From positions 62,001-126,000 of the IMG/VR virus record IMGVR_UViG_3300036770_004723: a DNA stretch of 64,000 nt; one strand, written 5' to 3'. The notes beneath the pieces are model-generated. The model made no database searches. It worked only from the letters and a program-made list of their open reading frames with translations, and was not told the origin of the DNA. Shown here piece after piece: positions 19,783-45,434 of this stretch; the first letter of the stretch is position 1, and the number at the start of each line of letters is the position of its first letter. The translations under genes and the position numbers were made by a program.

Positions 19783-19841
19783 ATTATACGGGATTAAAAT
19801 TTGAAAATCAATACAAGGCTTTTGACACACCTCGATCAGTT
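19783..19841 (-). promoter_or_regulatory. Sigma70 promoter with conserved upstream box (gyrA)
   Basis: AACTGATCGAGGTGTGTC-N12-TTGATT-N17-TATAAT. Confidence 0.8.
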
Positions 19842-20275
19842 CACAGTAAACTTGGTAAACCTTTAGGCAATATTACTTTTAAAAAAGCTGTATACAGTGG
19901 ACGATCAAAAGGAGAATTTGAAGAAATATAAGAAATATACGATTTCATATCAGGTAGCTTCAAACAGCTCAAAGTTTTTTCATTTGAAACTTTTATAGCT
20001 TCTTCAGGAATTAAAACAGAATTAGTGTTCAACCAAGCAAGACCTTCTGTGAAGACACGCGGAACCGAACCAATCAATTCATTTGGAGGATATTTTATAA
20101 AAAATCCTTGACTATCTATAATTGTCAAGGCTGCTTGATGTAGTTTTGTATCAGCTAAACATTCAAGCTTTGAATTGTATTCTACTTTAGATTTTACCCA
20201 TGACACATCGTTCTGTAAAACGCCTTGCGAAAAAAACATGTATACGTATTTTTTACTCATTAAACACCTCAACAA
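19841..20275 (-). CDS. Hypothetical protein
   Basis: ORF between gyrB-C and gyrA. Confidence 0.6.
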   Translation of the reverse strand: MLRCLMSKKYVYMFFSQGVLQNDVSWVKSKVEYNSKLECLADTKLHQAALTIIDSQGFFIKYPPNELIGSVPRVFTEGLAWLNTNSVLIPEEAIKVSNEKTLSCLKLPDMKSYISYISSNSPFDRPLYTAFLKVILPKGLPSLL

Positions 20276-20655
20276 ATATTGTATAAACTATTTTGAGTGA
20301 ATGGAAGAAGTGCCATCTTTTTCTTAAAGATTTCTCTTGATCCGTAATTATTTTTTATGTTAGCTCTAATTGATTTAAGATCAAGCAGTGTTTTCGTATC
20401 CCAATCACTAGCTTCAATACTAATGCGATCAAGTACATTTATTATAATGCTGGATACTCTGTTTACTTTTTTAGGCCATACACATTTTATTATATAACCA
20501 CTGTCATCAAGAATAATAAAAGAAAGTTTTTTAACTCTGTGATCTAAATGATTTACCTTCAACCAAAAAACTGAAAGACTACTATTTTGCATGTAGTCTG
20601 GATTCATTTTAAACGGAGTAAAACTCAGATCCACAAGTAAATAGTAGTTTTTCAT
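20269..20655 (-). CDS. Hypothetical protein
   Basis: IILDDSGYIIK resembles IIDSQGFFIK of the neighbouring ORF; possible paralogs. Confidence 0.6.
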   Translation of the reverse strand: MKNYYLLVDLSFTPFKMNPDYMQNSSLSVFWLKVNHLDHRVKKLSFIILDDSGYIIKCVWPKKVNRVSSIIINVLDRISIEASDWDTKTLLDLKSIRANIKNNYGSREIFKKKMALLPFTQNSLYNIC

Positions 20656-20662
20656 AACTCTT

Positions 20663-21403
20663 TTAATCCGATTCAGTTAGACCTAATAGTTTTCTACGTG
20701 CTGAAGCATCTTCACCAACAACAGATTTAAAGAAATCTAGATCTTGTTTTACACTATCATATTCAATCTGAATAAGATTACGGTTAGTTGGATCGAACGC
20801 AATCGCCTCTAAAAGATCTGCGTTAGTTTCTCCCCAACCTTTAGCACGGAATACACTTCCCTTAGGTGCATTCTTAGGCAGCTGCTTTAAACATTCCTCA
20901 AATGAATCACCGCTGTAGTGTTTGCCATCAACCAAAGCATTGTACAAACTTGCTTGAACAACAAACAAACGTCCTTCCCGAATGAAATCTGGAAGCAACT
21001 TATAAAACAGTGCAATCAATAGTGTATTGATGTGTGAACCATCTGCGTCAGCATCTGCAAGTAACAAGCAAACTGCTGCACGTAGATTCTTGGTGCTGAA
21101 TGTTGGATTATCTGCTTTAACATCCAAACTTTTTATATCAACACCGAGACTTGCCAAAATATCTTGAATACGATCATTAGAAAGCAACTTAGGTAAACTA
21201 ACGTTTAAAGCATTCGGAATTTTACCACCGAGTTTCAATACTTCTTGATTGTAACCACGCGCATTCTTAGCGGAATTATGAACTACCGCTCCATTACCTA
21301 AACAGAAATTATGATTCTGCGTTACAGTTAGATCGTATACAGGTACAGGATTATCCAGCTTAATAGTCCGGATCGACCTTACCTTTATTGTTGATGGTGT
21401 CAC
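20663..21403 (-). CDS. gyrB: GyrB C-terminal gene: 43-aa C-intein plus 203-aa TOPRIM/tail extein
   Basis: AAAGGGGA SD then GTG at 21403; PVYDLTV..NHNF..NGAVVHN|SAKNAR...LGGKIPN...DADADGSHI...RAKGWGE. Confidence 0.92.
   Translation of the reverse strand: MTPSTIKVRSIRTIKLDNPVPVYDLTVTQNHNFCLGNGAVVHNSAKNARGYNQEVLKLGGKIPNALNVSLPKLLSNDRIQDILASLGVDIKSLDVKADNPTFSTKNLRAAVCLLLADADADGSHINTLLIALFYKLLPDFIREGRLFVVQASLYNALVDGKHYSGDSFEECLKQLPKNAPKGSVFRAKGWGETNADLLEAIAFDPTNRNLIQIEYDSVKQDLDFFKSVVGEDASARRKLLGLTESD
21275..21403 (-). mobile_element. Split intein, C-half (IntC)
   Basis: Blocks F and G, terminal HN followed by Ser+1; no N-terminal intein blocks. Confidence 0.92.
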
Positions 21404-21455
21404 ATGAATCCCCTTTAACAATGATAATTTAGACTTTTAATAAATAGGAGTTTAT

Positions 21456-22661
21456 ATGAACCTAATCAAGCTACATGCACAAGTATTAAAATTTCCAAAA
21501 GAGCTTAAAAAGATTCTGACTATGTTTATATCAAACAGAAACAGACGAGGTTGTAATGCTTTGCTTAATAAGCCTAATTCCAATATAGGTAAATTACTAC
21601 GTGATTCGTTTAAGTCCCCTATAAATAAGATTGCTATTTCAGATCTACATACAGCGTTAACAGGTGAAGCTTCTGCCGTATGTTTAAGAAAAGGATGTAC
21701 AAACAAAACAAATTACTGCTATGCCGACCGCAAATTTCGAGCGTGCTGTTCTAAGAAATGTGCAAACATATCAGGTTATACTCAAGCTAAACGTGAAGAA
21801 GTAATGCTTGATCGTCACGGTGTAAAAAACCCATACCAAATGCCTTCTACTAAGAAGAAAATTGAGGAAACTAATCTCAAAAAATATGGCGTAAAAAATC
21901 CTTCTTCGTCTGAAAAAGTAAAGCTTAAACGTAAGAAAACTTTTCAGGATCGTTATGGTATAAATTCACCAATGGAAAGTTCTGAATTTAAAGACAAACA
22001 AAGAGCCGTACTTTTAGAAAATCATGGTGTAGATAATCCAATGAAGTCTTCTAAAATTCGATCTGAAATGTCAGAAAGATTTAGAATGAAGCATGGTGTA
22101 ACTAATCCAATGCAAGTTCAAGAATTCGTAACTAAATCTCAGAAAAACTACGAATTGGCTTGCATTAAAAAGTATGGAGTACGTAATGCAATGCAGTCTC
22201 CAGAAATTCTTAAAATATGGTCCAGTGCGCAATCAAAAAGAACTGAAATTTCACTATGTGGTACAACACTAAATCTACAAGGCTATGAAGAACATGCGTT
22301 AAATTGTCTTTACCGATCAAAACCTTTCAAGTCAATAACTAATGATCCTACAAAGATGCCTCAGGTCAATTACACAATTAACGGTAAGTCGAGGGTGTAT
22401 CTGCCTGATGCTGCAATCAAAATGTTTGATGAATCTATAAGAGTGATCGAAGTAAAAAGCTGGTACACACTATCAAAAAAAGACAACTACTACAAATTTC
22501 GTGCAGCTACTAAATTTTATAACTCAATAGGTGTCGATTTTATTCTTGTAATCGTAGACGACAAAACAGGCGCATTAAAGATCTTATTTAATCCATATAA
22601 AGGGTTAAGATCTTTAATACGCGCAGCGAAAGTTCTTAGCTCAGGCCGTCGAACTTGGTAA
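21456..22661 (+). CDS. Free-standing putative homing endonuclease, antisense inside fractured gyrB
   Basis: GGAG SD; Cys motifs (CCSKKC), six [KR][YH]G[VI]x[NS][PA] repeats, C-terminal YLPD...VIEVK PD-(D/E)xK domain. Confidence 0.85.
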   Translation: MNLIKLHAQVLKFPKELKKILTMFISNRNRRGCNALLNKPNSNIGKLLRDSFKSPINKIAISDLHTALTGEASAVCLRKGCTNKTNYCYADRKFRACCSKKCANISGYTQAKREEVMLDRHGVKNPYQMPSTKKKIEETNLKKYGVKNPSSSEKVKLKRKKTFQDRYGINSPMESSEFKDKQRAVLLENHGVDNPMKSSKIRSEMSERFRMKHGVTNPMQVQEFVTKSQKNYELACIKKYGVRNAMQSPEILKIWSSAQSKRTEISLCGTTLNLQGYEEHALNCLYRSKPFKSITNDPTKMPQVNYTINGKSRVYLPDAAIKMFDESIRVIEVKSWYTLSKKDNYYKFRAATKFYNSIGVDFILVIVDDKTGALKILFNPYKGLRSLIRAAKVLSSGRRTW

Positions 22662-25600
22662 TGTGATCTTCTACTGTAAGATCTTTTGCTTTAGTATATT
22701 CACTTCCAGTCAACCACAGATGATCTGGTGTACACAGCCAAACACTGTTATCTTCCAAAGTAACCTCAATAAGTTCATCCACGTATTTAGTTATACGTGG
22801 ATGTTCTAGTAGTGATATCTCAAAAGCGTCTTTTTCAATCGAATAGCTAACTCCTTCACAAACAAAACCTCTTTCATACATATATACAAGTTCTTCGAAA
22901 GTAATTGTATTCCCGTTCGACAATTTTACAGGTGTACTTGCAATAAAACAACCTCCCGCAGAATCGCCCTCCACCAAGTATAATTCGCGTTCATGAGGTT
23001 TGCAGTTTGGTGCTTCATAGAGTTTGACAGGTAAACTGCCTTGACTCTTTTTGACCTCGCTCATTCCTTTCATGACTTTTGCAAGATCTTCACGCGAAGC
23101 AGCAACTTCAGATGCACGTTTAATAATTGCTTTTGCCAGACTTTTGTTTTTCTTAAAGAATTCCGTTAAAGGCTCTGTTAAAAGATCCGTAACTTCATTG
23201 TCAATTTTACTTACAAGTTTATCCTTTACCTGTCCGCTAAACTGAGCGCTGTTCATTTTCCAGTTTATTAAGGCAACGGCACCAACATACAAATCATCTG
23301 GTTTAAATGCGCCAGATTTTTTAGGCATATAATCTTTTAAGGCTTTCGACATAGCTGCACGGAAACCTGTTACGTGTGTACCATGATCAACTGTTGGGCT
23401 ACTGTTTACGTAGCTACGAAATAAATCTGTGTCGTGGTAATTGGACCACTGAATAGCTACCTTTAATCTGCCTGAATCGAATTCGAAAGGCTTACCTATA
23501 CCTTCAAGCTCACGATCTTGTAGAATGTTTCCAATTATACCTGATAAACCTTTATCATTGTAAAATTCTTTGATTTTATTTGTTTCAAGATCGTGTAAAG
23601 TCAAAAGAAGTTTAGGGTTCATGGTACTCATGAACTTTAAATAATCTTCAACTATAGTCGGCTGTAAAATAGCCTGAGTGTATGTTTTTAATTTTTTTGT
23701 TCGGTTAGCGTCAACGCTGATCACACTTTGGTCAGGAACAAAGCGAACAATAGATCCTAAACGTTTATACTTTTTCTTGATAGTAGCTAGATAACCAAAT
23801 TGTTTTTTCAGAAAAGAATCAGAAACTTTTTTAACTTCAGTTATTGCTTTACCACAACTAAAGCCTTGGTAATACCATTGATTTTCACGGCAAGTCCAAA
23901 CTTCAAATTCTTTACTTATAGCATTCAGCGCAGAAATCCCGACACCATGAGTATTACCAACAAACACACCACTAGCTAATAAGTAGGTATGATCATTTTC
24001 AACACTCAGCCCGTATACAGGAACCTTGTCAACTTTTTTGATTTCAACAGAAACAACTTTATGGTTACGTTCTTGAGCTAATGATGCAAGTTCTGAATTC
24101 GAAGAACACGAATCAAAATATTTAGCCAATTCAACACCAGTTTCCCAGTTCGGACTGCCAGCTGTACGATTGTTTTCATACCAATCTTTATCTATATGTC
24201 CTACTTCTGACAAGCAAGCATTCAATGTAATCAAAAAACGAGAATACGCAGTTTGTTTACGTCTGTCTGTGTAATCAGAAACTTTTTGTTTGGCTTCTAA
24301 TCTACGTTGTTTGGCTTCAAGCTTAATTCTTCTGTTTTCAGCCTCTACACCAGTATATAGAAACACATCTGGATTAAGTCCGTGAGCAACACAGTCAACA
24401 AAACGTCCAATCGTAATATATTTTAAAACGGAAGCAGCATTTAAAGTTTTAGCTGATTTTAAAATGGCATAAATTTTGTTGAAGTCTAAGTCCAATAATT
24501 CTTCCTGAGTTAATTTTTGATCAAAAACAAAATTCAAAGCTTTACCTACAATTCGTTTTGCAGTCATGAACTCTGAGTTATCAAAAATCATTGAATTGGC
24601 AGATAGACCAACTTCGTAATCTAACGAATCAAAAAATCTCTGGCCAATTTCTTGTTTCTTATCAAGTCGATCTTGGAAATAAGCAACAGTATCTTCTACG
24701 TACTTTCTGAAAGTAGCAGGCTTATCAAAATAATATTTTAAAGTTGACCAGCTAGGAGCGCCATGAAACCTGTTAGCTTCGTAAAGCTCTTTATTAATTC
24801 GTCCAAATTTTACGAGACAACGGCTACCAATTTTAATTGCTTTGCCTGTAACTTGCTTGAATATAAAATCTGGATCTGTATTTAGCTCTGTAAGCATTTC
24901 AGATTTTAAATGAGCAGTTTCTTTTACGAAATCCATCCAAGCAAACCATTTATCAGGATGTTCTTCATAATGTTCTTTCTGTGTAATCGCTTTTAAATTT
25001 TCATAACGATTATCAGTCTTATCTTCGTTTTCGTGGTGAACGTGAAGATTATCAATATCTTCACCGTTATACTCCATGACGAATCTGTGAACACGACCTA
25101 ATTCACGGCTAACTAAATAGCCATCTTTATCTTGTTTAAAATCCAATGATCTCAAGCTCATACCAGCTTTTAGTTTTTGAGCCTGAACTTTCTTTAAACC
25201 TGTTGTGTAGAATGGATGGTCAACTGTACATTCAATTGTTTCACCGTTATCAAGTTCAATAACTGCAAGTTGATCGACATACTTAGTTATTTGGACATTG
25301 TAACAGGCGTTGATTCCGACTTCACCTGTTTTAGGATCTAAACTAAACACATCGAAAGGTTTAGCGTCATCTTCAAAACGTGAATACAATTCTTCAAAAG
25401 TTGGAGTAGTTCCATCAAGCAACCTGACACGAGTTGATCCTACAAAACAGCCACCAGATGTTTCATAAGCACTACTGTCAAATTTGCCTCCAGCATGTAG
25501 CTCAGTCAGGATTAATGTCAATGCACTAATCTTTTTACCGTCGATCAACTTATCGCCTACAGGGATACCTTGCGCACAATCTGCAATAACGTATTCACCT

Positions 25601-25812
25601 ACTTTATTATTATAAGCAACGTAAATAGCATTGTTACGGCCAGCTTCGTATTCGTCACGGCTGTTTTCAACAGGCTCTTTGATAGCCCGAAACATCATGG
25701 CGTCACCTAATTCACCTAAATACATCGCGACATTGCCACGAACTTTATCTAGACCTAAAAGGGCTTTGATGTCATCTTCATTATATGTTTTAGTTTTTAA
25801 CTTTGCCATCAA
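22636..25812 (-). CDS. gyrB: GyrB N-terminal gene: GHKL ATPase and transducer, cis intein, C-terminal N-intein
   Basis: EPVENSRDE, GIPV, LHAGGKF, SGG|THGVG, GTHVTGF, FSGQVK, ELYLVEGDSAGG|C. Confidence 0.94.
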   Translation of the reverse strand: MMAKLKTKTYNEDDIKALLGLDKVRGNVAMYLGELGDAMMFRAIKEPVENSRDEYEAGRNNAIYVAYNNKVGEYVIADCAQGIPVGDKLIDGKKISALTLILTELHAGGKFDSSAYETSGGCFVGSTRVRLLDGTTPTFEELYSRFEDDAKPFDVFSLDPKTGEVGINACYNVQITKYVDQLAVIELDNGETIECTVDHPFYTTGLKKVQAQKLKAGMSLRSLDFKQDKDGYLVSRELGRVHRFVMEYNGEDIDNLHVHHENEDKTDNRYENLKAITQKEHYEEHPDKWFAWMDFVKETAHLKSEMLTELNTDPDFIFKQVTGKAIKIGSRCLVKFGRINKELYEANRFHGAPSWSTLKYYFDKPATFRKYVEDTVAYFQDRLDKKQEIGQRFFDSLDYEVGLSANSMIFDNSEFMTAKRIVGKALNFVFDQKLTQEELLDLDFNKIYAILKSAKTLNAASVLKYITIGRFVDCVAHGLNPDVFLYTGVEAENRRIKLEAKQRRLEAKQKVSDYTDRRKQTAYSRFLITLNACLSEVGHIDKDWYENNRTAGSPNWETGVELAKYFDSCSSNSELASLAQERNHKVVSVEIKKVDKVPVYGLSVENDHTYLLASGVFVGNTHGVGISALNAISKEFEVWTCRENQWYYQGFSCGKAITEVKKVSDSFLKKQFGYLATIKKKYKRLGSIVRFVPDQSVISVDANRTKKLKTYTQAILQPTIVEDYLKFMSTMNPKLLLTLHDLETNKIKEFYNDKGLSGIIGNILQDRELEGIGKPFEFDSGRLKVAIQWSNYHDTDLFRSYVNSSPTVDHGTHVTGFRAAMSKALKDYMPKKSGAFKPDDLYVGAVALINWKMNSAQFSGQVKDKLVSKIDNEVTDLLTEPLTEFFKKNKSLAKAIIKRASEVAASREDLAKVMKGMSEVKKSQGSLPVKLYEAPNCKPHERELYLVEGDSAGGCFIASTPVKLSNGNTITFEELVYMYERGFVCEGVSYSIEKDAFEISLLEHPRITKYVDELIEVTLEDNSVWLCTPDHLWLTGSEYTKAKDLTVEDHITKFDGLS
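22639..22950 (-). mobile_element. Split intein, N-half (IntN, 104 aa)
   Basis: DSAGG|CFIASTPV...CTPDHLWLT...AKDLTVEDHI then stop; blocks A and B only. Confidence 0.92.
23953..25449 (-). mobile_element. GyrB cis intein (499 aa, HNH) in the ATP lid
   Basis: SGG|CFVGST...CTVDHPF...HVHHENEDKTDNRYEN...VFVGN|T. Confidence 0.92.
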
Positions 25813-26662: not shown

Positions 26663-27097
26663 TTAATTATCAAAAGCGAATTCGTTTGATTTCTTTTTTG
26701 ATTTTTTATCGGCCTTTGGATCGGCTTTTTTGTCGGCTTTTTTGTCGGCTTTTTTGTCAGCTTTAGCTGGAGCTTTCTTGTCAGCTACTTTTTTATCAGC
26801 AGCTTTCTTGTCAGCTTTAGCTGGAGCTTTTTTGTCAGCTTTAGCTGGAGCTTTTTTGTCAGCTTTAGCTGGAGCTTTTTTGTCGGCTACTTTTTTATCA
26901 GCAGCTTTTTTATCGCCTTTTGCTGGAGCAGCAACAACGCCAGCTAAAGAATCGGCTTGCAGTTTTGTAGCAGCAGCCAAAGCGTCAGCTTGATCAGCTT
27001 GTTTAGCCAATGCTTCGGCTTGTTTACGTAAAGCAGCTGCTTGTTTAGAAGAAGCGTTCGCAGATTTATTTAAGGCAGAAATGGCTTGTTTACTCAT
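26663..27097 (-). CDS. Histone H1-like Lys/Ala-rich protein
   Basis: N-terminal Ala-rich coiled coil, tandem KKAPAKAD repeats. Confidence 0.8.
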   Translation of the reverse strand: MSKQAISALNKSANASSKQAAALRKQAEALAKQADQADALAAATKLQADSLAGVVAAPAKGDKKAADKKVADKKAPAKADKKAPAKADKKAPAKADKKAADKKVADKKAPAKADKKADKKADKKADPKADKKSKKKSNEFAFDN

Positions 27098-27183
27098 GAT
27101 GTTTTTCTCAATTTTAATTTTAAATAAAAGGTAGGCTAACTTTAGCCTACCACAAAAAGATTAATTACGGATTGAATGGTAGA

Positions 27184-27930
27184 TTATTCTTCTTCTGACC
27201 ATTCTTCCTCTTCTTCATCTTCATCTTCATCTTCGTCAGATGAATAATTTTCTTCTAACCACCCACGAAGTTTATCTTCTGTCTTCAAGTATTTCGCCGG
27301 TACTTCAAGATCATTGTCTTTTACAAACTTTTTCAGTTCTTTTAAATCCATTTCGTCGAAGTCAGGAGCGTCATCTTCCTCTTCCTCTTCTTCGTCTTCA
27401 TCTTCGTCAGATGAATAATTTTCTTGCAAGAATTCACGAAGATCATCTTCGCTTTTTACTTTCTTAGGAACTTCAATATCATTATCTTTCGCAAACTTTT
27501 TCAGTTCCTTGAGGTTCATTTCGTCGAAGTCAGGAGCGTCATCTTCCTCTTCCTCTTCTTCGTCTTCGTCTTCATCCGAAGCAAATTCTTCTTGTAAGAA
27601 TTCACGTAAGGCGTCTTCGGTTTTTGCTTTCTTTGGAATTTCGATTTCGTTATCTTTACAGAATTTCTTCATTTCCTTGAGGTTCATTTCGTCGAAGTCA
27701 GGAACTTCCTCTTCCTCTTCTTCGTCTTCATCTGAATCTTCCTCTTCTTCCTCTTCCTCTTCTTCCTCTTCGTCTTTCTTTTTCTTTGACTTAGAAGGTG
27801 TACCTGAAGATCCAATTACAGCAGAAACTTCAGCAGAAGTAACAGCACCTTCTTCAATTGCTACGCCTAAAAGTTCCAATAAAGCCGATGCAACTGTTTT
27901 GCCTGAAGATGCTTTTGATTTTTTAGCCAT
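27184..27930 (-). CDS. Hyper-acidic protein with three HeH/Rho-N/SAP-like repeats
   Basis: 3x PDFDEM[ND]LKE[ML]KKFxKDNxxE[IV]P...EDxLR separated by poly-E/D. Confidence 0.85.
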   Translation of the reverse strand: MAKKSKASSGKTVASALLELLGVAIEEGAVTSAEVSAVIGSSGTPSKSKKKKDEEEEEEEEEEEDSDEDEEEEEEVPDFDEMNLKEMKKFCKDNEIEIPKKAKTEDALREFLQEEFASDEDEDEEEEEEDDAPDFDEMNLKELKKFAKDNDIEVPKKVKSEDDLREFLQENYSSDEDEDEEEEEEDDAPDFDEMDLKELKKFVKDNDLEVPAKYLKTEDKLRGWLEENYSSDEDEDEDEEEEEWSEEE

Positions 27931-28535: not shown

Positions 28536-28657
28536 ACACTTACCTTCTTTGTTTGTTTATTAACAGTGTTATTAGATTATCAAGTTCAGGCCGGAAAATA
28601 AAAAATCGACCTGAACTTTAATCTTAACCATTATTTACAGTTTTGTACCACGCACGA

Positions 28658-30439
28658 TTAAGCTGAGATAAGATCAACTACAACGGCGTTGTCCCATAAA
28701 GTCAGACTATCGACGCCTTGGTGTGACTGGGCGAAGTCTACTAACAGAGGCTGATATGGTTGCTCTTCAGTCTCAGCTTCAGAATTTTCCAGATAACTTT
28801 CGTCAGTTTCGTCAGTTTCTTCAAAGTCTTCTTCAGATTCTTCTTCAGATTCTTGCTCTGCGATTGAAATCAATTCGGTTAGTTTATAGTTCGGCTGTGA
28901 CGAAACATAGTCACGAATAGCGTCATTATTCAAAATGCTCGACACGGAAGCCGCAAAAACAAATCCATGTTCAACATTTGAGTCTGTATCTTCTAAAACA
29001 GAATCAGTAATCTTTGACAAGATTTTAGTCAAAGACACTAACATCTGTTCAAACTTTTGTTCAGACCGGACAGAATTCAAAAAAGGCACATTTAAATGTA
29101 CTACTACGTCAAAGAACGATGTAGTATCAATTTTGTCTGAGTTTAAGCAAACTTTAATACCTAAGAAATTGTTGATACTGAAATCTTCAGGTAGATTAAG
29201 TCCGCAATTTTCAGACAACATTGTTACACTGTCCAGTGCTTCTGTTAAGTTATTTAACAGCGTGTGCATGGTGATCTGAATATAATTCAGAGGACCTACA
29301 TAAGTACGGTTTGCTGCATTAAATTCTGCAAGTAAACGCACTACGCCTTCAATGGCGGTAGTGGCAAACCCGACATTATGGTCGTTATTTCTGGCAGCGG
29401 AAAGAGATCTTAATGGATGCTGTAAATCGTAAACTTCACCATCAATACCAGAAACGTTCTCTAATTCTGAAATTTCTACAGAAGTCAGATCTTGATTACT
29501 TTCAGCATAAAGCTGAATGATTAAACGTGCTTGAGTTTGGATCTCAATATGAGGCACGTTAGTATCACGCAAGTAGTTTACTGATTCTACACGATTCATT
29601 ACATAATCTTGAGTCGTTTCGTTTTCTTCGTTTTCTTCGAATTCGGTTTCTTCGAATTCGGTTTCTTCGAATTCGTTTTCTTCGTTTTCTTCGAATTCGT
29701 TTTCTTCGTTTTCTTCGAATTCGTTTTCTTCGAATTCGTTTTCTTCTTCGGTTTCTTGATCAGGATCAAAATCAGAATTTAGACTATCAATATCCAGATC
29801 CAGTTCTTCATCTGTAGAGTCTGAAGATTCTGCTTGAATACCTTCAAATTCTGATTCGTCATCAACGGCGTTTAAGCCGGTTTGAATCTCATAGTAGTAT
29901 TCTAACAGCATACCGCGTAAATCTGTTGTTGAAAAATCACGCCAACCTTCATACGTATTTTGAGCCGGTAAATATTTTTCAACATGATCCACACAAGCTT
30001 GACGATCCATTTTGTCAACTGTAGAAGTTACAAGATCCATAGGATCTTCCACACCAGCGGATTCCAAATCATCTAAAAGAATACCGTTTAGCGGATCTTC
30101 TTCTGTAGTCCCATCTACAGAACCAATGTCATCAAGTGAATCTTCCTCAGATTCACTTGCATTAGATTCAGACGCAGATTCAGACGCAGATTCACTTACA
30201 TTGGTTTCAGATTCATCAAATGAAAAATCACGATCAGCTTTTAAAATCAGCTGCAATTCATCCAGAAGAATCTGACGAAGACCGCGCGTATTATTAGCGT
30301 ATTCTCTTTGAATTTCGTTATACTTATTCGAGCCTAAGCTAGAGAGTAAGTCACCTAAACCACGTACAGATAAGTTGTCCAGATTTTCTTGCACAGAATA
30401 ATCTGTTTTAGAATCATACGGAAGTTTGATTGTTTGCAT
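28658..30439 (-). CDS. Large acidic protein with FEENE repeats
   Basis: 593 aa, strongly D/E-rich. Confidence 0.8.
   Translation of the reverse strand: MQTIKLPYDSKTDYSVQENLDNLSVRGLGDLLSSLGSNKYNEIQREYANNTRGLRQILLDELQLILKADRDFSFDESETNVSESASESASESNASESEEDSLDDIGSVDGTTEEDPLNGILLDDLESAGVEDPMDLVTSTVDKMDRQACVDHVEKYLPAQNTYEGWRDFSTTDLRGMLLEYYYEIQTGLNAVDDESEFEGIQAESSDSTDEELDLDIDSLNSDFDPDQETEEENEFEENEFEENEENEFEENEENEFEETEFEETEFEENEENETTQDYVMNRVESVNYLRDTNVPHIEIQTQARLIIQLYAESNQDLTSVEISELENVSGIDGEVYDLQHPLRSLSAARNNDHNVGFATTAIEGVVRLLAEFNAANRTYVGPLNYIQITMHTLLNNLTEALDSVTMLSENCGLNLPEDFSINNFLGIKVCLNSDKIDTTSFFDVVVHLNVPFLNSVRSEQKFEQMLVSLTKILSKITDSVLEDTDSNVEHGFVFAASVSSILNNDAIRDYVSSQPNYKLTELISIAEQESEEESEEDFEETDETDESYLENSEAETEEQPYQPLLVDFAQSHQGVDSLTLWDNAVVVDLISA
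29613..29757. repeat. Coding tandem repeat (9/15-bp units encoding EEN/FEENE/FEETE)
   Basis: Repeated ttcgttttcttcgaa. Confidence 0.85.
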
Positions 30440-33153: not shown

Positions 33154-33224
33154 AAGATATTTTTGAATTTGATAATGAATTTACAGTATTGGCGCTGTTA
33201 AGTGCCAGCGCCAAGCACAAACTT

Positions 33225-33815: not shown

Positions 33816-33880
33816 TTTAAGATCCTCACAATTAAAGTTTGATTTTGGAAAGTAGCACTATTGCCCTAACCAATGCCGCT

Positions 33881-33938
33881 ATTATACCAAGATCGATTAG
33901 TTTATGCAAAGTATTTTTTTGACACACTTCGATCAGTT
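33881..33938 (-). promoter_or_regulatory. Sigma70 promoter with upstream box
   Basis: AACTGATCGAAGTGTGTC-N11-TTGCAT-N17-TATAAT. Confidence 0.85.
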
Positions 33939-33947
33939 AACTTACTG

Positions 33948-34043
33948 TTGATTGCGCAAGTTCTAAAGTTTGTACTTAAGTAGACTTGCTTCAGATTATC
34001 CACTTAGATACAAACTTTTTTGTATCTAGTTCTCTGCAACCAA
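33948..34043 (-). ncRNA. Candidate ~96-nt three-way-junction small RNA
   Basis: Closing stem TTGGTTGC/GCAATCAA, two internal hairpins, begins just after a -10 element, no ORF. Confidence 0.5.
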
Positions 34044-34050
34044 TGACGAT

Positions 34051-34108
34051 ATTATAACAAAATACATAGTAAGGTACAACATGTATTTTTGACACACCAA
34101 GATCAGTT
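34051..34108 (-). promoter_or_regulatory. Sigma70 promoter with upstream box
   Basis: AACTGATCTTGGTGTGTC-N11-TTGTAC-N17-TATAAT. Confidence 0.85.
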
Positions 34109-34471
34109 GGCGTTATACCTATCCAACATCAGACGTAGTTGACTTTCTTTTGTAGGAAAACCAATAACAGTAAAATCCGTAAACAATTTCAGGGCATTAT
34201 GCAATGACAGTTTAAATAGATCTTCAGACTTATTTGTACGTACCGTAACATTGAAAATATCTTGCGTTGATTTTGATAAGGTAACTACACGGTAAGTCAT
34301 GCCAGACTGAGTGAATACCAACTTCGTATCCACATATTTAAATTGAGATAAAAAGATTGGACGTTCTTTACCGTATCCAATCAATAATTCCAGTTTCCTC
34401 CAGTGACTATAATTAATGTCAGTCACATGTTCAGCAATAAATTGCTGTATTGCTTGTTTACCTTCAAACAT
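34103..34471 (-). CDS. Hypothetical protein
   Basis: ORF with SD. Confidence 0.65.
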   Translation of the reverse strand: MFEGKQAIQQFIAEHVTDINYSHWRKLELLIGYGKERPIFLSQFKYVDTKLVFTQSGMTYRVVTLSKSTQDIFNVTVRTNKSEDLFKLSLHNALKLFTDFTVIGFPTKESQLRLMLDRYNAN

Positions 34472-34734: not shown

Positions 34735-34763
34735 GCTGTTTCCTTTTGCTTTAACTTGAGTAC

Positions 34764-34821
34764 ATTATAACAAAAGGCGGCATTTATGTATACCGCCTTT
34801 TTTGACACACCAAGATTAGTT
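34764..34821 (-). promoter_or_regulatory. Sigma70 promoter with upstream box, overlapping a terminator-like hairpin
   Basis: AACTAATCTTGGTGTGTC-N11-TATACA-N17-TATAAT; AAAAGGCGG/CCGCCTTTT inverted repeat inside. Confidence 0.75.
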
Positions 34822-36822
34822 GGCGGTTGAGTTCAATTTTAAAATAGTTGTCAACTGCGAAAGTAATGAACCTACTTTATTTGGTGCCATATTAATGCGC
34901 TGTTTAGATAGTGTTTCGGTATATGAATCAAAGATTTGAAATACAGCATCAAACACTTTAATGGTAGAATCTCCAATTTCATTTTCTTGATCAGCGAACA
35001 GATTCAACGATACACCAAACTGTTTGATTATACTCATTAAAGGCTTTTCAGGCATTGTGGTCGATCCTAATGCCTGAACATTAAGGAGTTCCGAAGATAT
35101 TACACTAACACCTCGAATAATAGCTGCCATATCGACAAGCGAACTTAATTCATCAAGATTATTAATCAAGCGAATTAAGTTTTTTGCCCGCATTCCGGTA
35201 GTAATAGTAGTAGGTAATCCATAAGGAACATCCTGATAGATGTTTTTGATGTCACTGCTTTCTTTAACTCCCACAGTGTATTGGAAAATATCTTCTAAGC
35301 CTAAAGCAACGAATAAGGCTCTTAGAGTATTTCCGCCGTAAGTAAGTAATTCACCTGCAAGATTTTCGTCAAACTGTCCATCTCGGCTATACAAGCTTTT
35401 CATAGTAACTAAGGCCGTATATGCACTGTTACTATCATAATCTACTTTTTTATCCAAGAAACCTTGGAAGAAGTTCATAAGGAAAAAAGAAATAGGGGCT
35501 TTACTTCTCTTCAACCAGTTTCTGTAATTGGTTAATTCAGGATTATGTAAAGCACTTAAAATATTTATTACAGGCTCCAGAACCACATTACCTAAGTGGT
35601 GTGTCAGAGTTAAAAACTTTTCTATTGTAGTGTAATCAATAATCGGTTCTTTTTGAGTCAGACAACGCAAAAGACTCATTAAATCAATCAGAACACCTAG
35701 ATTAGTTGTACGACTATTTCTTGCAACTCGTACATGTGCCTGTGTATTTAAAAACATGGCGGTTACTTGAGTCAAAAGTAATCTTAAAGATGTATCAAGT
35801 ACCGCAATATTCTTTTCATTCGACCTAATAAGAGTATTTACATCGTAAGGTTCAAATAAAAGGCTAATGTAGATCTTGGCTAAGTTTACCGCTTGTTTTT
35901 CACTTACTTCAGTGAATTTACCTACGCAAGTTAAACTCAAAGGATTAGGTTGAAGATTAACATAATCAGGTAATACCGAAATTAATTTATCAGGATCCAT
36001 TAAAAGTTGTTCAGCTGGTTCCTTATTACCTAAAGCTTTCAATGTCTGTTTAAATTCAGAAAGCAATTGTTTTGAATGCTTTTCCGTAAACCAACTTAAA
36101 TCAGGCAAAGCTTCGATAGCATTTTCTGACAGATCCACTTCAGGTCCTAGAACATCAACTGATTTGTTACCTGCCTGACTTTCTTCTGTTTCTACTGGCT
36201 CGGGTTTAGTTTGAACTTTTACAAAACTACTTAATTCAACACGTCCCGATTTTGTAGATGATTGTGTTGATAAGTCCGTGTCTGTTTTTACGGGTGTAAT
36301 TTCATCAAGCATTTTATTTCGGATTTCCTTTGAATCCAAAAGTGCATATAATTGATGGAACATAAACGATGATACGAGGATCATCCAATTGTTTTCATTA
36401 CACTTTCTTAACCATTGTACGATCTCAGGGTACACGGAACCTAAACTTGTAGATTTTTCATTTAAGATAGCGTGTTTGTAATTAAGTGCAGCCCCAAGCG
36501 GAAGTAAATTGCACTTAGAGATATCCTCAAGTTTTATACCTTTAACTTTAGGTCGCTGAACATTTTCAATTTTCTCCATAATAGGTTCGGAGAATTCGAT
36601 TTGAAAAAACACAAAAGACTCTGGAACATTACATACATTACGCAAAGAAGAAAGCCTTTCTTCTGAAAGTAACTGGAAATGCTCACTAACGTTCAACATG
36701 TTGACACCATTCACAAGAATGAGTCCATTTCCACGAATAGATTTCATAACGAATAATTCGGAAATACCTACTATTACTGAATTAACGCTAACGAAACTTA
36801 ATGGTGTATTTGCAGCTATCAT
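34816..36822 (-). CDS. Hypothetical protein (668 aa)
   Basis: Long ORF, GAGGA SD; KSGRVELSSF in the linker. Confidence 0.8.
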   Translation of the reverse strand: MIAANTPLSFVSVNSVIVGISELFVMKSIRGNGLILVNGVNMLNVSEHFQLLSEERLSSLRNVCNVPESFVFFQIEFSEPIMEKIENVQRPKVKGIKLEDISKCNLLPLGAALNYKHAILNEKSTSLGSVYPEIVQWLRKCNENNWMILVSSFMFHQLYALLDSKEIRNKMLDEITPVKTDTDLSTQSSTKSGRVELSSFVKVQTKPEPVETEESQAGNKSVDVLGPEVDLSENAIEALPDLSWFTEKHSKQLLSEFKQTLKALGNKEPAEQLLMDPDKLISVLPDYVNLQPNPLSLTCVGKFTEVSEKQAVNLAKIYISLLFEPYDVNTLIRSNEKNIAVLDTSLRLLLTQVTAMFLNTQAHVRVARNSRTTNLGVLIDLMSLLRCLTQKEPIIDYTTIEKFLTLTHHLGNVVLEPVINILSALHNPELTNYRNWLKRSKAPISFFLMNFFQGFLDKKVDYDSNSAYTALVTMKSLYSRDGQFDENLAGELLTYGGNTLRALFVALGLEDIFQYTVGVKESSDIKNIYQDVPYGLPTTITTGMRAKNLIRLINNLDELSSLVDMAAIIRGVSVISSELLNVQALGSTTMPEKPLMSIIKQFGVSLNLFADQENEIGDSTIKVFDAVFQIFDSYTETLSKQRINMAPNKVGSLLSQLTTILKLNSTAN

Positions 36823-42664: not shown

Positions 42665-42701
42665 GATGTTTTTCCTTAGATTCTCATTGATGGTAAATGT
42701 T

Positions 42702-43100
42702 TTAGATCATTGTGCGTAAAGCATGTTTTATAATAAGTGCATCTACGCTGTTTTCACAAATATTGTAATAAAGGCAAAGGCGCAAACATAAATAAGAAAT
42801 ATCTGCTTCTTTAGTTTCGTGCCGAATTTTTAAAGTTTTTGATTTAGTGCCTAGCTTTAGTTTAAAGCTGTTGTTTACGATTACCACGTTACGTAATCGG
42901 CCGTTAGGTTTGAATACTTTATTCAAAGAATAAGAATCCAAACTTTTTTGTTCCAACAGCTTTTCTTCTGCTCCTCGGATTCTATTTTTTAAGATTGAGG
43001 TGAATCCTTTAGCTAAATCACCTAAATAAACACAATAGGACTCAGACTTAGCGTATAGACGCACAGGAAAGTCTGAAGTTTCAATCAAGGTTATTTCCAT
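42702..43100 (-). CDS. Hypothetical protein
   Basis: ORF in operon context. Confidence 0.6.
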   Translation of the reverse strand: MEITLIETSDFPVRLYAKSESYCVYLGDLAKGFTSILKNRIRGAEEKLLEQKSLDSYSLNKVFKPNGRLRNVVIVNNSFKLKLGTKSKTLKIRHETKEADISYLCLRLCLYYNICENSVDALIIKHALRTMI

Positions 43101-43104
43101 GAGA

Positions 43105-43338
43105 TTAATCTCTTTTTAATAAACTTTTTCGTCCTAGCTTAAAATTTTTGGCAGCATACCAAAAGCCGGAAATAAAAAGACAAATTGAAGACAAGGCGAA
43201 AACAAAAACCAACGCACCATAAATAAAATACGAGGCCATTTTAGTATTATAGGTATCAAATAACATAATACTAAGTACTGTCAATGCCGTGGAAATAAAA
43301 GCGCCTAATAGACGTCTTTGCCAGCGATAAGTGTACAA
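43105..43338 (-). CDS. Small two-TM membrane protein
   Basis: Two hydrophobic segments, AGGAG SD. Confidence 0.65.
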   Translation of the reverse strand: MYTYRWQRRLLGAFISTALTVLSIMLFDTYNTKMASYFIYGALVFVFALSSICLFISGFWYAAKNFKLGRKSLLKRD

Positions 43339-43373
43339 ACTTTTTCTCCTATATTTGTTTAACTTATGGACTT

Positions 43374-43431
43374 ATTATACCAAAAATCAATAACTAGGTA
43401 AATCACTATTTTTGACACAGCTCGATCAGTT
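43374..43431 (-). promoter_or_regulatory. Sigma70 promoter with upstream box
   Basis: AACTGATCGAGCTGTGTC-N11-TTTACC-N17-TATAAT. Confidence 0.85.
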
Positions 43432-43824
43432 AGAAGAATCTATTTCTTTAATGTCTTCTAACTCTTCTCTTACGATCTCAGCAATGCGTTTATCAAGACG
43501 AGAACGTTTTTTCTTTTTCTCTGCCTTAAGTTTGTTGCGCATTAAACGATTATGAATGATCATACCGCTAACGTAACCAAGACCTATACCTAATCCACTA
43601 AAGCACCCCATAATTAGTGCTTTATCCAGTCCAGAATCTGAAACGGATTTAGCGATCAACGCAAATACAATAGCGTCACATAGTCCCATAAACAAGCCAG
43701 TTAACCCTGCTGCAAATTTCAGGTCAGCATTTACGTTTTTGTTTTGAGTACTACGTAAAAAAGCACTTAACCAACCAACTAGAAGAATGGACACATAAGG
43801 CAAATAGATAGCAAACTTTTCCAT
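43426..43824 (-). CDS. Three-TM membrane protein with basic tail
   Basis: Three hydrophobic segments. Confidence 0.7.
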   Translation of the reverse strand: MEKFAIYLPYVSILLVGWLSAFLRSTQNKNVNADLKFAAGLTGLFMGLCDAIVFALIAKSVSDSGLDKALIMGCFSGLGIGLGYVSGMIIHNRLMRNKLKAEKKKKRSRLDKRIAEIVREELEDIKEIDSSN

Positions 43825-43825
43825 A

Positions 43826-44116
43826 CTAACCTCTTTTTAACTCATAGACTATTAATATAGGGAGTGGATCTTCTGGATCGTAAGAACCGTAAACTCTAAT
43901 GTACTTACGTCCTTGTTTTTCCACGTATTCGTAATCGTGAATTAAATCAAGTAAAAAGATTGTATCGTGATGAAACATCAATCCTTTATACTTAAAAAAC
44001 TTTTCACGATCTAATAGAAGACAAACTTTTTCAGGTTTCTGTTTTACCTCAATAAGTGTTTTGTGTGGATCCGTCTTTAGATCGTAGCAATAGACTTTAC
44101 CGGACTTAGCTTCCAT
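43826..44116 (-). CDS. Hypothetical protein
   Basis: Coupled ORF. Confidence 0.6.
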   Translation of the reverse strand: MEAKSGKVYCYDLKTDPHKTLIEVKQKPEKVCLLLDREKFFKYKGLMFHHDTIFLLDLIHDYEYVEKQGRKYIRVYGSYDPEDPLPILIVYELKRG

Positions 44117-44288
44117 GTGAAATTCTCTTTTTCACAGGATCTAATTTCTTCAGTTCTTCGATTATATCCTGTAACATTGCCAACTTTTTAGCCCTAGTAG
44201 GTGAAGGCTTAACGCTTATCCGTCGCATTTCAGACTCTAAATAATTAATTTGGTCTGTGCGGGTGAAACACTCAACTTTATCTAACAT
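44106..44288 (-). CDS. Hypothetical protein
   Basis: Coupled ORF. Confidence 0.55.
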   Translation of the reverse strand: MLDKVECFTRTDQINYLESEMRRISVKPSPTRAKKLAMLQDIIEELKKLDPVKKRISHGS

Positions 44289-44746
44289 TGGTAATATACC
44301 CCTGAATAATCATCAACCATATTATATTCGACACCGTTACCATCTTCAGCTTTCTGCTCTGCCCATAGTTGATCCCAAGAAATAGATGCAACAGCTTTAT
44401 AATTAAAGATAGAAATCAAATAGTGTAAATCCACTAAAAATTCCTTTGAATCACTTATTCTGTTTTTACCTAAAACATAAAGTGTATGAGTAAACAAAGA
44501 ACTACGTGCTGGATTAGTGACCCCCAATCCCAATAAAGCATAAAGTAAGGCTTCAGTAGTTAGACGTATATTCAAACTTTTTGTTCTGGCTTGAATTATC
44601 TTTATCATAAAGTTTACAGTAGAATCTTCTTTCAGTGAGTTAAAAAATTCTTCTACTTTTGAAGCATCAGCCGTAGAAATACTAAGAACAAAATTTAATG
44701 TTTGAGTATCTAGATCAACCAAAAGACACTGATCTAATGTTTTCAT
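44282..44746 (-). CDS. Hypothetical protein
   Basis: AAGGA SD. Confidence 0.65.
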   Translation of the reverse strand: MKTLDQCLLVDLDTQTLNFVLSISTADASKVEEFFNSLKEDSTVNFMIKIIQARTKSLNIRLTTEALLYALLGLGVTNPARSSLFTHTLYVLGKNRISDSKEFLVDLHYLISIFNYKAVASISWDQLWAEQKAEDGNGVEYNMVDDYSGVYYQC

Positions 44747-44755
44747 TGTTTTTCC

Positions 44756-44953
44756 TTAAATTTTAAGAACATTTTTAAGTTTGAGATCTCTGACCTCTAG
44801 AATTTTGTCGTATCTTAATTTTTTGGTTTCACCTGTAGTAACGCACATACAGTTAAAAGTATATTTATCTACTGCGCCAACTACTGCAACACGATTCTGA
44901 TCTTTGATCCACCAGACATCTACTATATCAAAAGGTTTAACTTCCGTTTTCAT
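44756..44953 (-). CDS. Hypothetical small protein
   Basis: AAGGA SD. Confidence 0.6.
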   Translation of the reverse strand: MKTEVKPFDIVDVWWIKDQNRVAVVGAVDKYTFNCMCVTTGETKKLRYDKILEVRDLKLKNVLKI

Positions 44954-44991
44954 AAAGATCCTTACATGAGTTAAGTTAAAAAAGTTCTAAC

Positions 44992-45330
44992 TTAACTCAG
45001 CTGAATTAGTTTAGTTTCTGCGCAAGTTGTTCGACTGTTGGTAATACGTGCTTCACATACTAAAGCGTAAAGATCGTTATCTGCGTCAGCATCAATATCA
45101 GATAAATGTTCGACAAGAATATCAATAGGAATTTTAGGTTCTCGTATATCCATATCAACAATCTTTTCGATCAAAGCAATTTCAATTGCTTCAGATTTAT
45201 GTGAATCTTCATTTAGCACATACGCATGTAAAGGACTTGCAGTGTAATAAAGGAAAACAAAAGTTTCTTTACGTCCAGCGACAGTAACGCGCATCATAGC
45301 TTTAAGCTCTGTATTCAATTTAATTCTCAC
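44992..45330 (-). CDS. Hypothetical protein
   Basis: Downstream of boxed promoter. Confidence 0.6.
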   Translation of the reverse strand: MRIKLNTELKAMMRVTVAGRKETFVFLYYTASPLHAYVLNEDSHKSEAIEIALIEKIVDMDIREPKIPIDILVEHLSDIDADADNDLYALVCEARITNSRTTCAETKLIQLS

Positions 45331-45376
45331 TTATATTAGCAGATTTGAATAGGTTCTGCCTTTAACCTATTAACAC

Positions 45377-45434
45377 ATTATATCAAAAATCTGTAGGTCA
45401 GTAAATCACTGTTTTTGACACAGCTCGATCAGTT
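45377..45434 (-). promoter_or_regulatory. Sigma70 promoter with upstream box
   Basis: AACTGATCGAGCTGTGTC-N11-TTTACT-N17-TATAAT. Confidence 0.85.

What the first reader, a model, noticed from the sequence alone, without database searches (positions are those of the whole stretch)
19783..45434. Six sigma70 promoters share a fixed-position upstream box AACTGATCnnGnTGTGTC
Seen at 19783-19841, 33881-33938, 34051-34108, 34764-34821, 43374-43431 and 45377-45434: box, 11 nt (12 once) starting with an A-tract, variable -35, exactly 17 nt, then TATAAT. The box is better conserved than the -35 element. It contains GATC in 5 of 6 copies, reads TTGACA on the opposite strand, and supplies the Asn-stop of three upstream genes. 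Inference: a site about -47 to -65 for an activator or repressor (phage-injected or host), possibly Dam-sensitive, defining an early regulon that includes gyrA.
Basis: partly seen in the sequence, partly recalled or inferred. Interest (0 to 1): 0.6.

Follow-up and report, generated by a model that had tools for sequence, protein, structure and literature searches.

The report
Conserved upstream box on phage early promoters
Every strong host-type promoter of this uncultured 287-kb jumbo phage carries the same 18-base box just upstream; evolution has kept it as strictly as the -10 element, so it is most likely a docking site for an unknown protein that controls all early genes together.

Summary
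The six window copies lie on the minus strand. The whole 286.6-kb genome, a jumbo phage from a subsurface metagenome, has 12 solid copies, all on that strand.

Each copy is one unit:
- box at -64 to -47
- AAAAA at -46 to -42
- a weak -35
- 17 nt, then TTTTGnTATAAT
- CA at the predicted start

A core-promoter matrix that ignores the box finds only box-bearing sites. So the box marks the phage's entire sigma70-type promoter class, not a sub-regulon.

Three related metagenomic phage contigs (large terminase 65% identical) carry the same box at orthologous genes, including gyrA. Between lineages the flanks are about 33% identical, the box 82% and the -10 region 86%.

Natural, orthologously conserved variants lack GATC, so Dam dependence is not essential, although the phage encodes a Dam-class methylase.

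Many copies hold a terminator hairpin in the spacer, and one 4.2-kb box-flanked segment appears to be absent from most genomes in the source sample. The units therefore resemble the PeSL promoter-terminator cassettes of T4-type phages, with an added non-AT box.

The binding factor, and whether it activates or represses, remain unknown.

The parts
19776..19841 (-). Box-promoter unit in front of gyrA. Box 19824-19841, -35 TTGATT 19806-19811, -10 TATAAT 19783-19788. Box-to-TATAAT distance is 35 nt. No TG extension and no CA start.
   Evidence: The orthologous copy in G001/G003 also has the 35-nt distance and also precedes gyrA.
33874..33938 (-). Box-promoter unit. Box 33921-33938, -35 33904-33909, TGG+TATAAT with the -10 at 33881-33886, predicted start A at 33874. 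It is the downstream member of a tandem pair.
34044..34108 (-). Box-promoter unit. Box 34091-34108, -35 34074-34079, -10 34051-34056, predicted start 34044. The spacer forms an A/T-closed hairpin (-7 kcal/mol). Box positions 4-6 are the stop codon of ORF 34103-34471.
34757..34821 (-). Box-promoter unit with the variant box AACTAATC (no GATC). Box 34804-34821, -35 34787-34792, -10 34764-34769, predicted start 34757. The spacer is a GC hairpin plus T-run (-17.5 kcal/mol, terminator-like). Box positions 4-6 are the stop codon of ORF 34816-36822.
   Evidence: The ortholog in G001/G003 has AACTTTTC, also without GATC.
43367..43431 (-). Box-promoter unit. Box 43414-43431, -35 TTTACC 43397-43402, -10 43374-43379, predicted start 43367. 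Box positions 4-6 are the stop codon of ORF 43426-43824. A 77-aa ORFan lies downstream.
45370..45434 (-). Box-promoter unit. Box 45417-45434, -35 TTTACT 45400-45405, -10 45377-45382, predicted start 45370. From box to -10 it is 95% identical over 58 nt to a non-orthologous copy at genome position 272217-272274.
16133..19780 (-). gyrA homologue interrupted by two inteins. It is the first gene behind the 19783-19841 unit.
   Evidence: Pfam DNA_topoisoIV, Intein_splicing (2 stretches), LAGLIDADG_3 and HNH_3. The relatives' gyrA aligns contiguously across both insertions.
53551..54579 (-). Phage-encoded sigma-like protein in which only region 2 is detectable. It is the probable reader of the second promoter class (AAACTGTAAATA), not of the box promoters.
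   Evidence: PF04542 at 24.1 bits in the six-frame search and 21.6 bits on the ORF. The AAACTGTAAATA motif lies 40 nt upstream of its start.

Best explanation
Each site is the upstream module of a roughly 75-nt composite early-promoter cassette read by the host sigma70-type RNA polymerase.

The cassette consists of:
- the box at -64 to -47
- an AAAAA run at -46 to -42, matching the proximal UP-element subsite
- a weak -35
- a 17-nt spacer
- TTTTGnTATAAT (an extended -10)
- a CA start

This is the phage's only sigma70-type promoter class: about 12 copies, all on one strand, mostly in front of small ORFans, and also in front of gyrA.

The box is a sequence-specific recognition element for a DNA-binding protein that is still unidentified. 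Its two conserved blocks, AACTGATC and TGTGTC, are about 11 bp apart, so they lie on one face of the helix. They sit where the distal alpha-CTD/UP contact would normally be. From there the factor would touch or compete with the polymerase alpha subunit and so control all early promoters together.

The core promoter is already near consensus. I therefore lean towards a timing switch, meaning coordinate shut-off or over-stabilisation by a phage protein. Recruitment by a host or co-injected activator remains nearly as likely.

As a side effect of their similarity, the cassettes recombine with each other and mediate gain and loss of gene blocks. Some cassettes also carry the terminator of the upstream unit inside the promoter spacer.

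Shown: the anatomy, the exclusivity, the selection, and one recombination junction. Inferred: that a protein binds, which protein, and the direction of control.
For: Exclusivity:
- Twelve of the 18 minus-strand TGnTATAAT sites carry the box, and none of the 9 plus-strand sites does. The gyrA copy has the box but no TG extension, so it is not among those 18.
- A matrix built from -36 to +2, without the box, scores only the box-bearing sites above 12 bits, plus one weak site inside a gene.

Logo of 31 distinct copies:
- Box positions are invariant or nearly so, except position 9; position 11 is a purine.
- A5, T-18 to T-15, G-14, TATAAT and C-1/A+1 are conserved.
- Within the -35, only T-35 and G/T-33 are informative.

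Conservation between lineages:
- The box is kept in G001-G003, whose large terminase is 65% identical to that of this phage.
- Copies sit at orthologous positions whose flanking proteins are 41-74% identical.
- Segment identities across six orthologous pairs: upstream 30 nt 33%, box 82%, A5 97%, -41 to -19 43%, -18 to -7 86%, +3 to +26 36%.
- The atypical 35-nt spacing of the gyrA copy is kept in both lineages.

Restriction to this clade:
- The box is absent from Erwinia phage Y3.
- It occurs at chance level in representative genomes of 185,579 bacterial and archaeal species.

Early character: the downstream genes are mostly small ORFans.

Cassette behaviour:
- Terminator-like spacer hairpins occur in 2-3 of 12 copies here and about 9 of 21 in the relatives.
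- Upstream ORFs stop at or within 6 nt of the box edge in 8 of 12 copies here, and often in the relatives.
- The contig start is a recombinant junction between two copies.
- The 4.2-kb segment between those two copies has contig depth 7-7.7, against 22-28 for other contigs of the same phage.
Against: - No protein has been identified. Pfam finds no helix-turn-helix regulator in the two minus-strand gene blocks, though most ORFs there are unassignable.
- The host is unknown, so a host factor cannot be sought.
- There are no RNA data, so neither the start sites nor early timing are shown.
- The box has no clear dyad or direct-repeat symmetry, and I could match it to no known regulator site by eye.
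- A near-consensus core promoter needs no activator.
- Operators usually overlap the core promoter rather than lie at -55.
Confidence: 0.55

Rival explanations
1. The box is contacted directly by the host RNA polymerase, through an alpha C-terminal domain or a sigma domain, with no extra factor. It would be a host-lineage-specific substitute for the distal UP subsite.
For: - It occupies the distal UP position, -64 to -47, directly next to a near-consensus proximal subsite (AAAAA then tAg).
- It is present on every promoter of the class.
- No phage regulator was found.
Against: - From published work, known UP elements are A/T-rich. This box is half G/C and shows about 29 bits of specific information.
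- It is not enriched in any of the representative bacterial genomes scanned, whereas a polymerase-read element should also occur on host promoters.
Confidence: 0.12
2. The box is kept as the boundary or crossover site of mobile promoter cassettes. It would serve as homology for, or the target of, recombination that shuffles gene blocks, not for transcription.
For: - The recombinant junction at the contig start has its crossover inside the 14-nt stretch agccAACTGATCGA, at the left edge of the box.
- The 4.2-kb segment between the two copies is under-covered.
- Non-orthologous copies share 58-59 nt at 88-95% identity, which suggests gene conversion.
- The phage has its own RecA.
- PeSLs behave this way (PMC2839356, PMC4122927).
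Against: - Homology alone would let the sequence drift between lineages. Instead the same positions are fixed in both lineages while the spacer varies freely within each genome.
- The fixed 34-nt distance to the -10 points to promoter geometry.
- The crossover lies in the longest identical stretch of the two copies, as plain homologous recombination predicts.
- G001 and G003 are collinear across eight copies.
Confidence: 0.12
3. The box is a methylation switch. The GATC inside it is methylated by the phage or host Dam-type enzyme, and its methylation state gates factor binding.
For: - GATC is present in 26 of 33 distinct copies.
- The phage encodes a D12-class adenine methylase and three N6/N4 methylases.
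- GATC is the most over-represented 4-base palindrome, observed/expected 1.34.
Against: - The variants AACTAAAC, AACTAATC and AACTTTTC lack GATC yet keep everything else. One orthologous promoter lacks GATC in both lineages.
- The methylase specificity is unknown.
- The second half of the box, TGTGTC, is at least as conserved and has no methylation motif.
Confidence: 0.1
4. The box acts in RNA, as the 3' end of the upstream transcript: part of a terminator, a processing site or a stop-codon context.
For: - It is transcribed with the upstream gene.
- It supplies that gene's stop codon in 5 of 12 copies.
- It directly precedes terminator-like hairpins in some copies.
Against: - Most copies in this genome have no stable hairpin, yet the box is unchanged.
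- Its distance is fixed to the -10, not to a hairpin.
- Several copies lie 150-300 nt after the upstream stop codon.
Confidence: 0.05
5. The TTGACA on the opposite strand is the -35 of a divergent, antisense promoter.
For: A perfect TTGACA preceded by a T-run is present on the plus strand of every copy.
Against: Seventeen nt further on the plus strand there is no conserved -10. Logo positions upstream of the box carry under 0.5 bit, apart from a pyrimidine preference (0.84 bit) at the base just before the box. Any such transcript would be antisense to the upstream gene.
Confidence: 0.02

Closest known systems
PeSLs (promoter-early stem-loops) of T4-type phages RB49/phi1, T4/PST and KVP40/nt-1 (PMC2839356, PMC4122927)
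   Same: - Repeated, conserved sigma70-type early promoters in intergenic gaps.
- They begin at the upstream gene's stop codon and end at the downstream ribosome-binding site.
- A stem-loop terminator often lies between or over the -35 and -10.
- They are associated with small ORFans.
- Copies recombine and create insertions and deletions.
   Different: - In PeSLs the region upstream of the -35 is simply AT-rich. Here it is an 18-nt, half-G/C box at a fixed distance, conserved as strongly as the -10.
- This phage is not T4-type. The nearest named large terminases, at 42% identity, are those of Erwinia phage Y3 and Dickeya phages JA11 to JA33.
- The hairpin is optional here.
T4 early promoters (own knowledge)
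   Same: - A -35 of the TTTAC type.
- An A-run near -42.
- TG-extended TATAAT and a CA start.
- Used by unmodified host polymerase immediately after infection.
   Different: T4 has a second A/T tract near -52 where this phage has the box. No sequence-specific upstream box is described for T4.
UP element of rrnB P1 and the alpha-CTD contact (own knowledge)
   Same: The position, -40 to -60. The AAAAA at -46 to -42 fits the proximal subsite consensus.
   Different: The distal half is not A/T-rich. It carries far more sequence information than an alpha-CTD site.
Phage regulators that act from upstream on host polymerase: phi29 p4 (activates A3, represses the strong A2c promoter by holding the polymerase) and P2 Ogr / P4 Delta sites centred near -55 (own knowledge)
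   Same: - The site lies upstream of the -35, at about -55.
- The same site sits on every promoter of one temporal class.
- p4 shows that an upstream contact can repress a strong promoter.
   Different: - Those sites are dyad-symmetric, and their proteins are known.
- They control late promoters or the early-to-late switch.
- Here the box is asymmetric and sits on the early class.
MarA/SoxS/Rob marbox (own knowledge)
   Same: An asymmetric site of about 20 bp with two conserved blocks one helical turn apart, able to work from class I positions upstream of the -35.
   Different: The sequence does not fit the marbox consensus when aligned by eye. No AraC-type protein was detected in the phage.

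Membership tests
PeSL promoter-terminator cassette | Repeated sigma70-like early promoter in intergenic gaps | tested here: met
   There are 12 copies with TGnTATAAT or TATAAT, a -35-like hexamer at 17 nt and a CA start.
PeSL promoter-terminator cassette | Stem-loop with terminator character inside or next to the promoter | tested here: inconclusive
   Strong hairpins (-7 to -19 kcal/mol, z below -2) occur in 2-3 of 12 copies here and about 9 of 21 in the relatives. The other copies have none.
PeSL promoter-terminator cassette | Recombination between copies creates insertions, deletions or mini-circles | tested here: met
   One case. Contig positions 1-168 join the flanks of copies 282345 and 286522. 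The 4.2-kb segment between them has depth 7-7.7 against 22-28 for other contigs of the phage. Contig depths are coarse, and raw reads were not available.
PeSL promoter-terminator cassette | Host phage is a T4-type myovirus, and the region upstream of the -35 is merely AT-rich | tested here: not met
   The nearest named large terminases are those of Erwinia phage Y3 and Dickeya JA phages, at 42% identity. The upstream region is a specific box that is half G/C.
UP element (alpha-CTD site) | A/T-rich tracts at -46 to -38 (proximal) and -57 to -47 (distal) | tested here: inconclusive
   The proximal part is met: AAAAA at -46 to -42, then T/C, A, G. The distal part is not met, because the box sequence lies there.
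Class I transcription-factor site | A sequence-specific protein binds upstream of the -35 and contacts the alpha-CTD | not testable with these tools
   Only the position (-64 to -47), the same-face block spacing and the purifying selection are shown.
Dam-regulated promoter | GATC is indispensable in the control site, and a Dam-type methylase is present | tested here: not met
   A methylase is present, but 7 of 33 copies lack GATC, including an orthologous pair that lacks it in both lineages.

The most novel reading that the evidence does not exclude
The box is a private third promoter element. A factor brought in with the virion, or a host protein peculiar to this phage clade's host, reads it. 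That would give these jumbo phages an early-promoter class no host gene shares, and one handle to switch the whole class. Because the same unit carries terminator, stop codon and promoter, it would also act as a self-contained, recombining gene-cassette adaptor outside the T4-type phages.
Probability: 0.25. Interest if true: 0.7.

Novelty: new variant of a known kind. Interest (0 to 1): 0.5.

Why it matters
Early promoters of phages that depend on host polymerase are thought to need only sigma70 elements plus A/T-rich UP tracts. Here a specific 18-bp element, conserved as strongly as the -10 across lineages whose large terminase proteins are only 65% identical, points to an unrecognised player in host take-over by a jumbo-phage clade.

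It also extends PeSL-like promoter-terminator cassettes, and their role in gene-block gain and loss, beyond T4-type phages, with a polymorphism visible in a natural population.

The unit is short and easy to synthesise. It can be tested in reporters even before the host is known, and it could become a compact insulated promoter part.

Tried and rejected
- Sub-regulon marker: rejected. No box-less promoter of this type exists in the genome.
- Divergent promoter from the opposite-strand TTGACA: rejected. There is no conserved -10 partner.
- Pure terminator: rejected. Most copies in this genome have no hairpin.
- Known regulator sites compared by eye (CRP/FNR, IHF, Fis, LexA, PhoB, DnaA box, marbox, sigmaE-type -35/-10, Type I restriction sites): none fits. 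These comparisons rest on consensus sequences recalled from memory, so they are leads, not tests.
- Host site: the scan of one genome per bacterial and archaeal species for the box plus AAAA gave 7 scattered hits, which is chance level.
- More relatives: the IMG/VR and metagenome scans found only the same small clade, plus one 1.1-kb contig with a partial box.
- Named phages: megablast and tblastn with a 668-aa ORF gave nothing. blastn with a whole unit gave only chance hits in Staphylococcus phages. Erwinia phage Y3 lacks the box.
- Expression data: no RNA run holds the locus, so start sites could not be checked.
- Literature: no paper contains the motif.
- AAGTTTGT, seen downstream of several units, is not enriched genome-wide.
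- The 5' leaders show no consistent structure.
- Phage regulator candidates: Pfam on 214 minus-strand ORFs found no helix-turn-helix protein.
- Rfam found only two tRNAs in the window.


Full report
**1. What the sequence is**

The window is positions 62,001-126,000 of a single 286,584-bp contig. The contig has 34.6% G+C and is held by one subsurface-metagenome run. It is a jumbo phage.
- The large terminase matches PHROG 17415. Its nearest named relatives, at about 42% identity, are Erwinia phage Y3 and Dickeya phages JA11 to JA33.
- Genes lie in four large strand blocks. The finding lies in a minus-strand block that holds gyrA, gyrB, DnaB, RecA and many small ORFs.

**2. The observation**

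All six sites are present on the minus strand with 0 or 1 mismatch to the box. At up to 3 mismatches there are 7 hits against 1.5 expected, and no shuffle reached 7. Reading the sites confirms the described order: box, 11 or 12 nt starting with an A-run, -35, 17 nt, TATAAT.

Genome-wide there are 12 solid copies, all on the minus strand:
- six in the window's block
- six in the block at 252-287 kb
- one further chimeric copy at the contig start

**3. One unit, not a box added to some promoters**

- Twelve of the 18 minus-strand TGnTATAAT sites carry the box. None of the nine plus-strand sites does. The gyrA copy has the box but no TG extension, so it is not among those 18.
- A weight matrix built from -36 to +2 only, without the box, recovers the box-bearing sites at 19-33 bits. 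Otherwise it finds one site inside a gene at 12 bits.
- The generic hexamer scan is not enriched over shuffles (51 hits against 60 expected), but its top TG-extended hits are these sites.

The logo of 31 distinct copies shows:
- the box at -64 to -47, with only position 9 free and position 11 a purine
- AAAAA at -46 to -42
- T at -35 and G/T at -33
- TTTT at -18 to -15 and G at -14
- TATAAT
- C at -1 and A at +1, seven nt after the -10

The conserved CA at the canonical distance is extra support for a real sigma70-type promoter. The box and core promoter therefore form the phage's single host-type promoter class.

**4. Selection**

Three IMG/VR contigs carry the same unit: G001 (319.5 kb, with terminal repeats), G002 and G003. 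All their copies lie on one strand. Their large terminase is 65% identical to that of this phage.

At least five promoter positions are orthologous. They lie in front of gyrA, an 83-aa ORF, a 77-aa ORF and a 196-aa ORF, and after a 218-aa ORF. The flanking proteins are 41-74% identical.

Nucleotide identity across six orthologous pairs:

| Segment | Identity |
|---|---|
| upstream 30 nt | 33% |
| box | 82% |
| A5 | 97% |
| -41 to -19 | 43% |
| -18 to -7 | 86% |
| +3 to +26 | 36% |

So the box is held as tightly as the -10 while its surroundings are randomised. The odd 35-nt spacing of the gyrA copy is retained in both lineages. Concerted evolution alone would not fix the same positions in two lineages while the spacer varies freely within each genome.

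**5. Restriction to this clade**

- The box is absent from Erwinia phage Y3.
- It is at chance level in representative genomes of 185,579 bacterial and archaeal species.
- In 241 million metagenome records it was found only in the same phage group.
- No paper contains it.

**6. Cassette features**

- In 5 of 12 copies the upstream ORF ends with the TGA or TAA at box positions 4-6. In three more it ends within 6 nt upstream. The relatives show the same pattern.
- The 34-nt spacer is a strong hairpin followed by the T-run in 2-3 of 12 copies here and in about 9 of 21 copies in the relatives. One of these has a GC stem with a TTCG loop. The other copies have no hairpin.
- Downstream genes are mostly small ORFans.

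This matches the published description of PeSLs in T4-type phages: composite early promoter plus terminator, stop codon at the 5' edge, stem-loop between or over the hexamers, and association with ORFans.

**7. Recombination between copies**

- Contig positions 1-127 are identical to 282,240-282,366, and positions 101-168 match 286,517-286,584. The contig start therefore joins the downstream flank of copy 282345 to the upstream flank of copy 286522.
- The switch falls inside agccAACTGATCGA, the longest stretch the two copies share.
- In the Logan contigs of the source run, the two contigs that cover the 4.2 kb between these copies have mean depth 7.0 and 7.7. The contig continuing past the end has depth 22, and contigs from other parts of the phage have 27-28. 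All contigs break at the promoter repeats.

The simplest reading is that most genomes in the sample lack this box-flanked segment. Contig depths are coarse, and the run is probably the source of the assembly, so this is supportive evidence rather than proof.

Two further points bear on recombination:
- Non-orthologous copies share 58-59 nt at 88-95% identity, which suggests conversion or duplication.
- Two units in the window lie 170 nt apart with no ORF between them, where the relatives have 1.2 kb.

**8. Dam**

- The phage encodes a D12-class methylase and three N6/N4 methylases.
- GATC is the most over-represented 4-base palindrome, observed/expected 1.34.
- However, 7 of 33 distinct copies lack GATC (AACTAAAC, AACTAATC, AACTTTTC). 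The promoter of the 83-aa ORF lacks it in both lineages.

Methylation may modulate the site but cannot be its essence.

**9. Mechanism**

The position, the same-face spacing of the two conserved blocks (about 11 bp apart), the fixed distance to the -10 and the selection all argue for a sequence-specific protein acting on the polymerase from upstream.

The core promoter is near consensus: extended -10, perfect -10, proximal UP-like A-run and CA start. It should be strong on its own. This tilts me towards a coordinate timing or shut-off function, for which phi29 p4 at the A2c promoter is a precedent (own knowledge). A host or co-injected activator is nearly as plausible, because early promoters must fire before any phage protein is made.

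No candidate protein emerged. Pfam finds no helix-turn-helix regulator among 214 minus-strand ORFs. There are no RNA data, so the start sites and the timing are inferred.

**10. Context: a second promoter class**

The motif AAACTGTAAATA lies 25-70 nt upstream of start codons on both strands. It has no -35 partner. It also occurs in G001, G003 and Erwinia phage Y3, with zero hits for the control pattern.

The phage encodes a sigma-like protein in which only region 2 is detectable, and that gene is itself preceded by the motif. This looks like a late or middle class read by the phage sigma. It makes the box promoters the host-dependent early class.

**11. Verdict**

The closest known kind is the PeSL cassette, but a defining feature (a merely AT-rich upstream region, in a T4-type phage) is not met. 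I therefore file it as a new variant of a known kind, with moderate interest.

Noticed in passing
window 16133-19780 (-) and 22636-25812 (-): gyrA carries two inteins (one with HNH, one with LAGLIDADG), and gyrB carries one intein with HNH. In G001/G003 the gyrA homologue aligns contiguously across both insertion points, so those phages appear to lack the inteins.
   Followed up: partly
genome-wide; in the window e.g. 54612-54619 (-), 33180-33187 (-), 28634-28641 (-): A second promoter-like motif, AAACTGTAAATA, lies 25-70 nt upstream of start codons on both strands and has no -35 partner. There are 43 ACTGTAAA sites, about 20 of them close to gene starts. Exact copies also occur in G001, G003 and Erwinia phage Y3, with zero hits for the control pattern. 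It is probably the late or middle class.
   Followed up: partly
window 53551-54579 (-): A phage-encoded sigma-like protein in which only region 2 is detectable (PF04542, near its cut-off). The AAACTGTAAATA motif lies 40 nt upstream of its start.
   Followed up: partly
genome 282,240-286,584 and 1-168 (outside the window; L058:15656-20000, L044:1-168): The contig start is a recombinant junction between two box promoters. The 4.2-kb segment between them has about one third of the contig depth of the rest of the phage in the source run. This looks like an insertion/deletion polymorphism in the natural population.
   Followed up: partly
window 33881-34108 (-): Two complete box promoters lie 170 nt apart with no ORF between them. 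The interval contains a hairpin (AGATACAAAAAAGTTTGTATCT). In G001/G003 the corresponding promoters are 1,214 nt apart. This may be a lost cassette or a short non-coding transcript.
   Followed up: no
genome 235250-235996 (-), L115: A D12/Dam-class adenine methylase, plus three N6_N4 methylases in the same minus-strand block. GATC is the most over-represented 4-base palindrome, observed/expected 1.34.
   Followed up: partly
window 21456-22661 (+): This is the only sizeable plus-strand ORF inside the minus-strand block, and it lies between gyrA and gyrB. It has DUF7487 and a TnsA-like endonuclease N-terminal domain. It may be a mobile or homing element.
   Followed up: no
window 26700-27760 and 29600-29760: Internal tandem or direct repeats, with units of about 50-170 nt at 80-90% identity, lie inside minus-strand ORFs (genome 88,702-89,733 and 91,618-91,757).
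   Followed up: no
window 47687-47758 and 47918-47991 (-): Two tRNA genes.
   Followed up: no
transcribed leaders of several units, e.g. window 33860-33875 (-), and L033, L035, L004: A subset of units share the leader start CATTGGTTAAGGCAA or a close variant directly at the predicted +1, often within a 5' hairpin. Other leaders differ, and there is no overall structural signal.
   Followed up: partly
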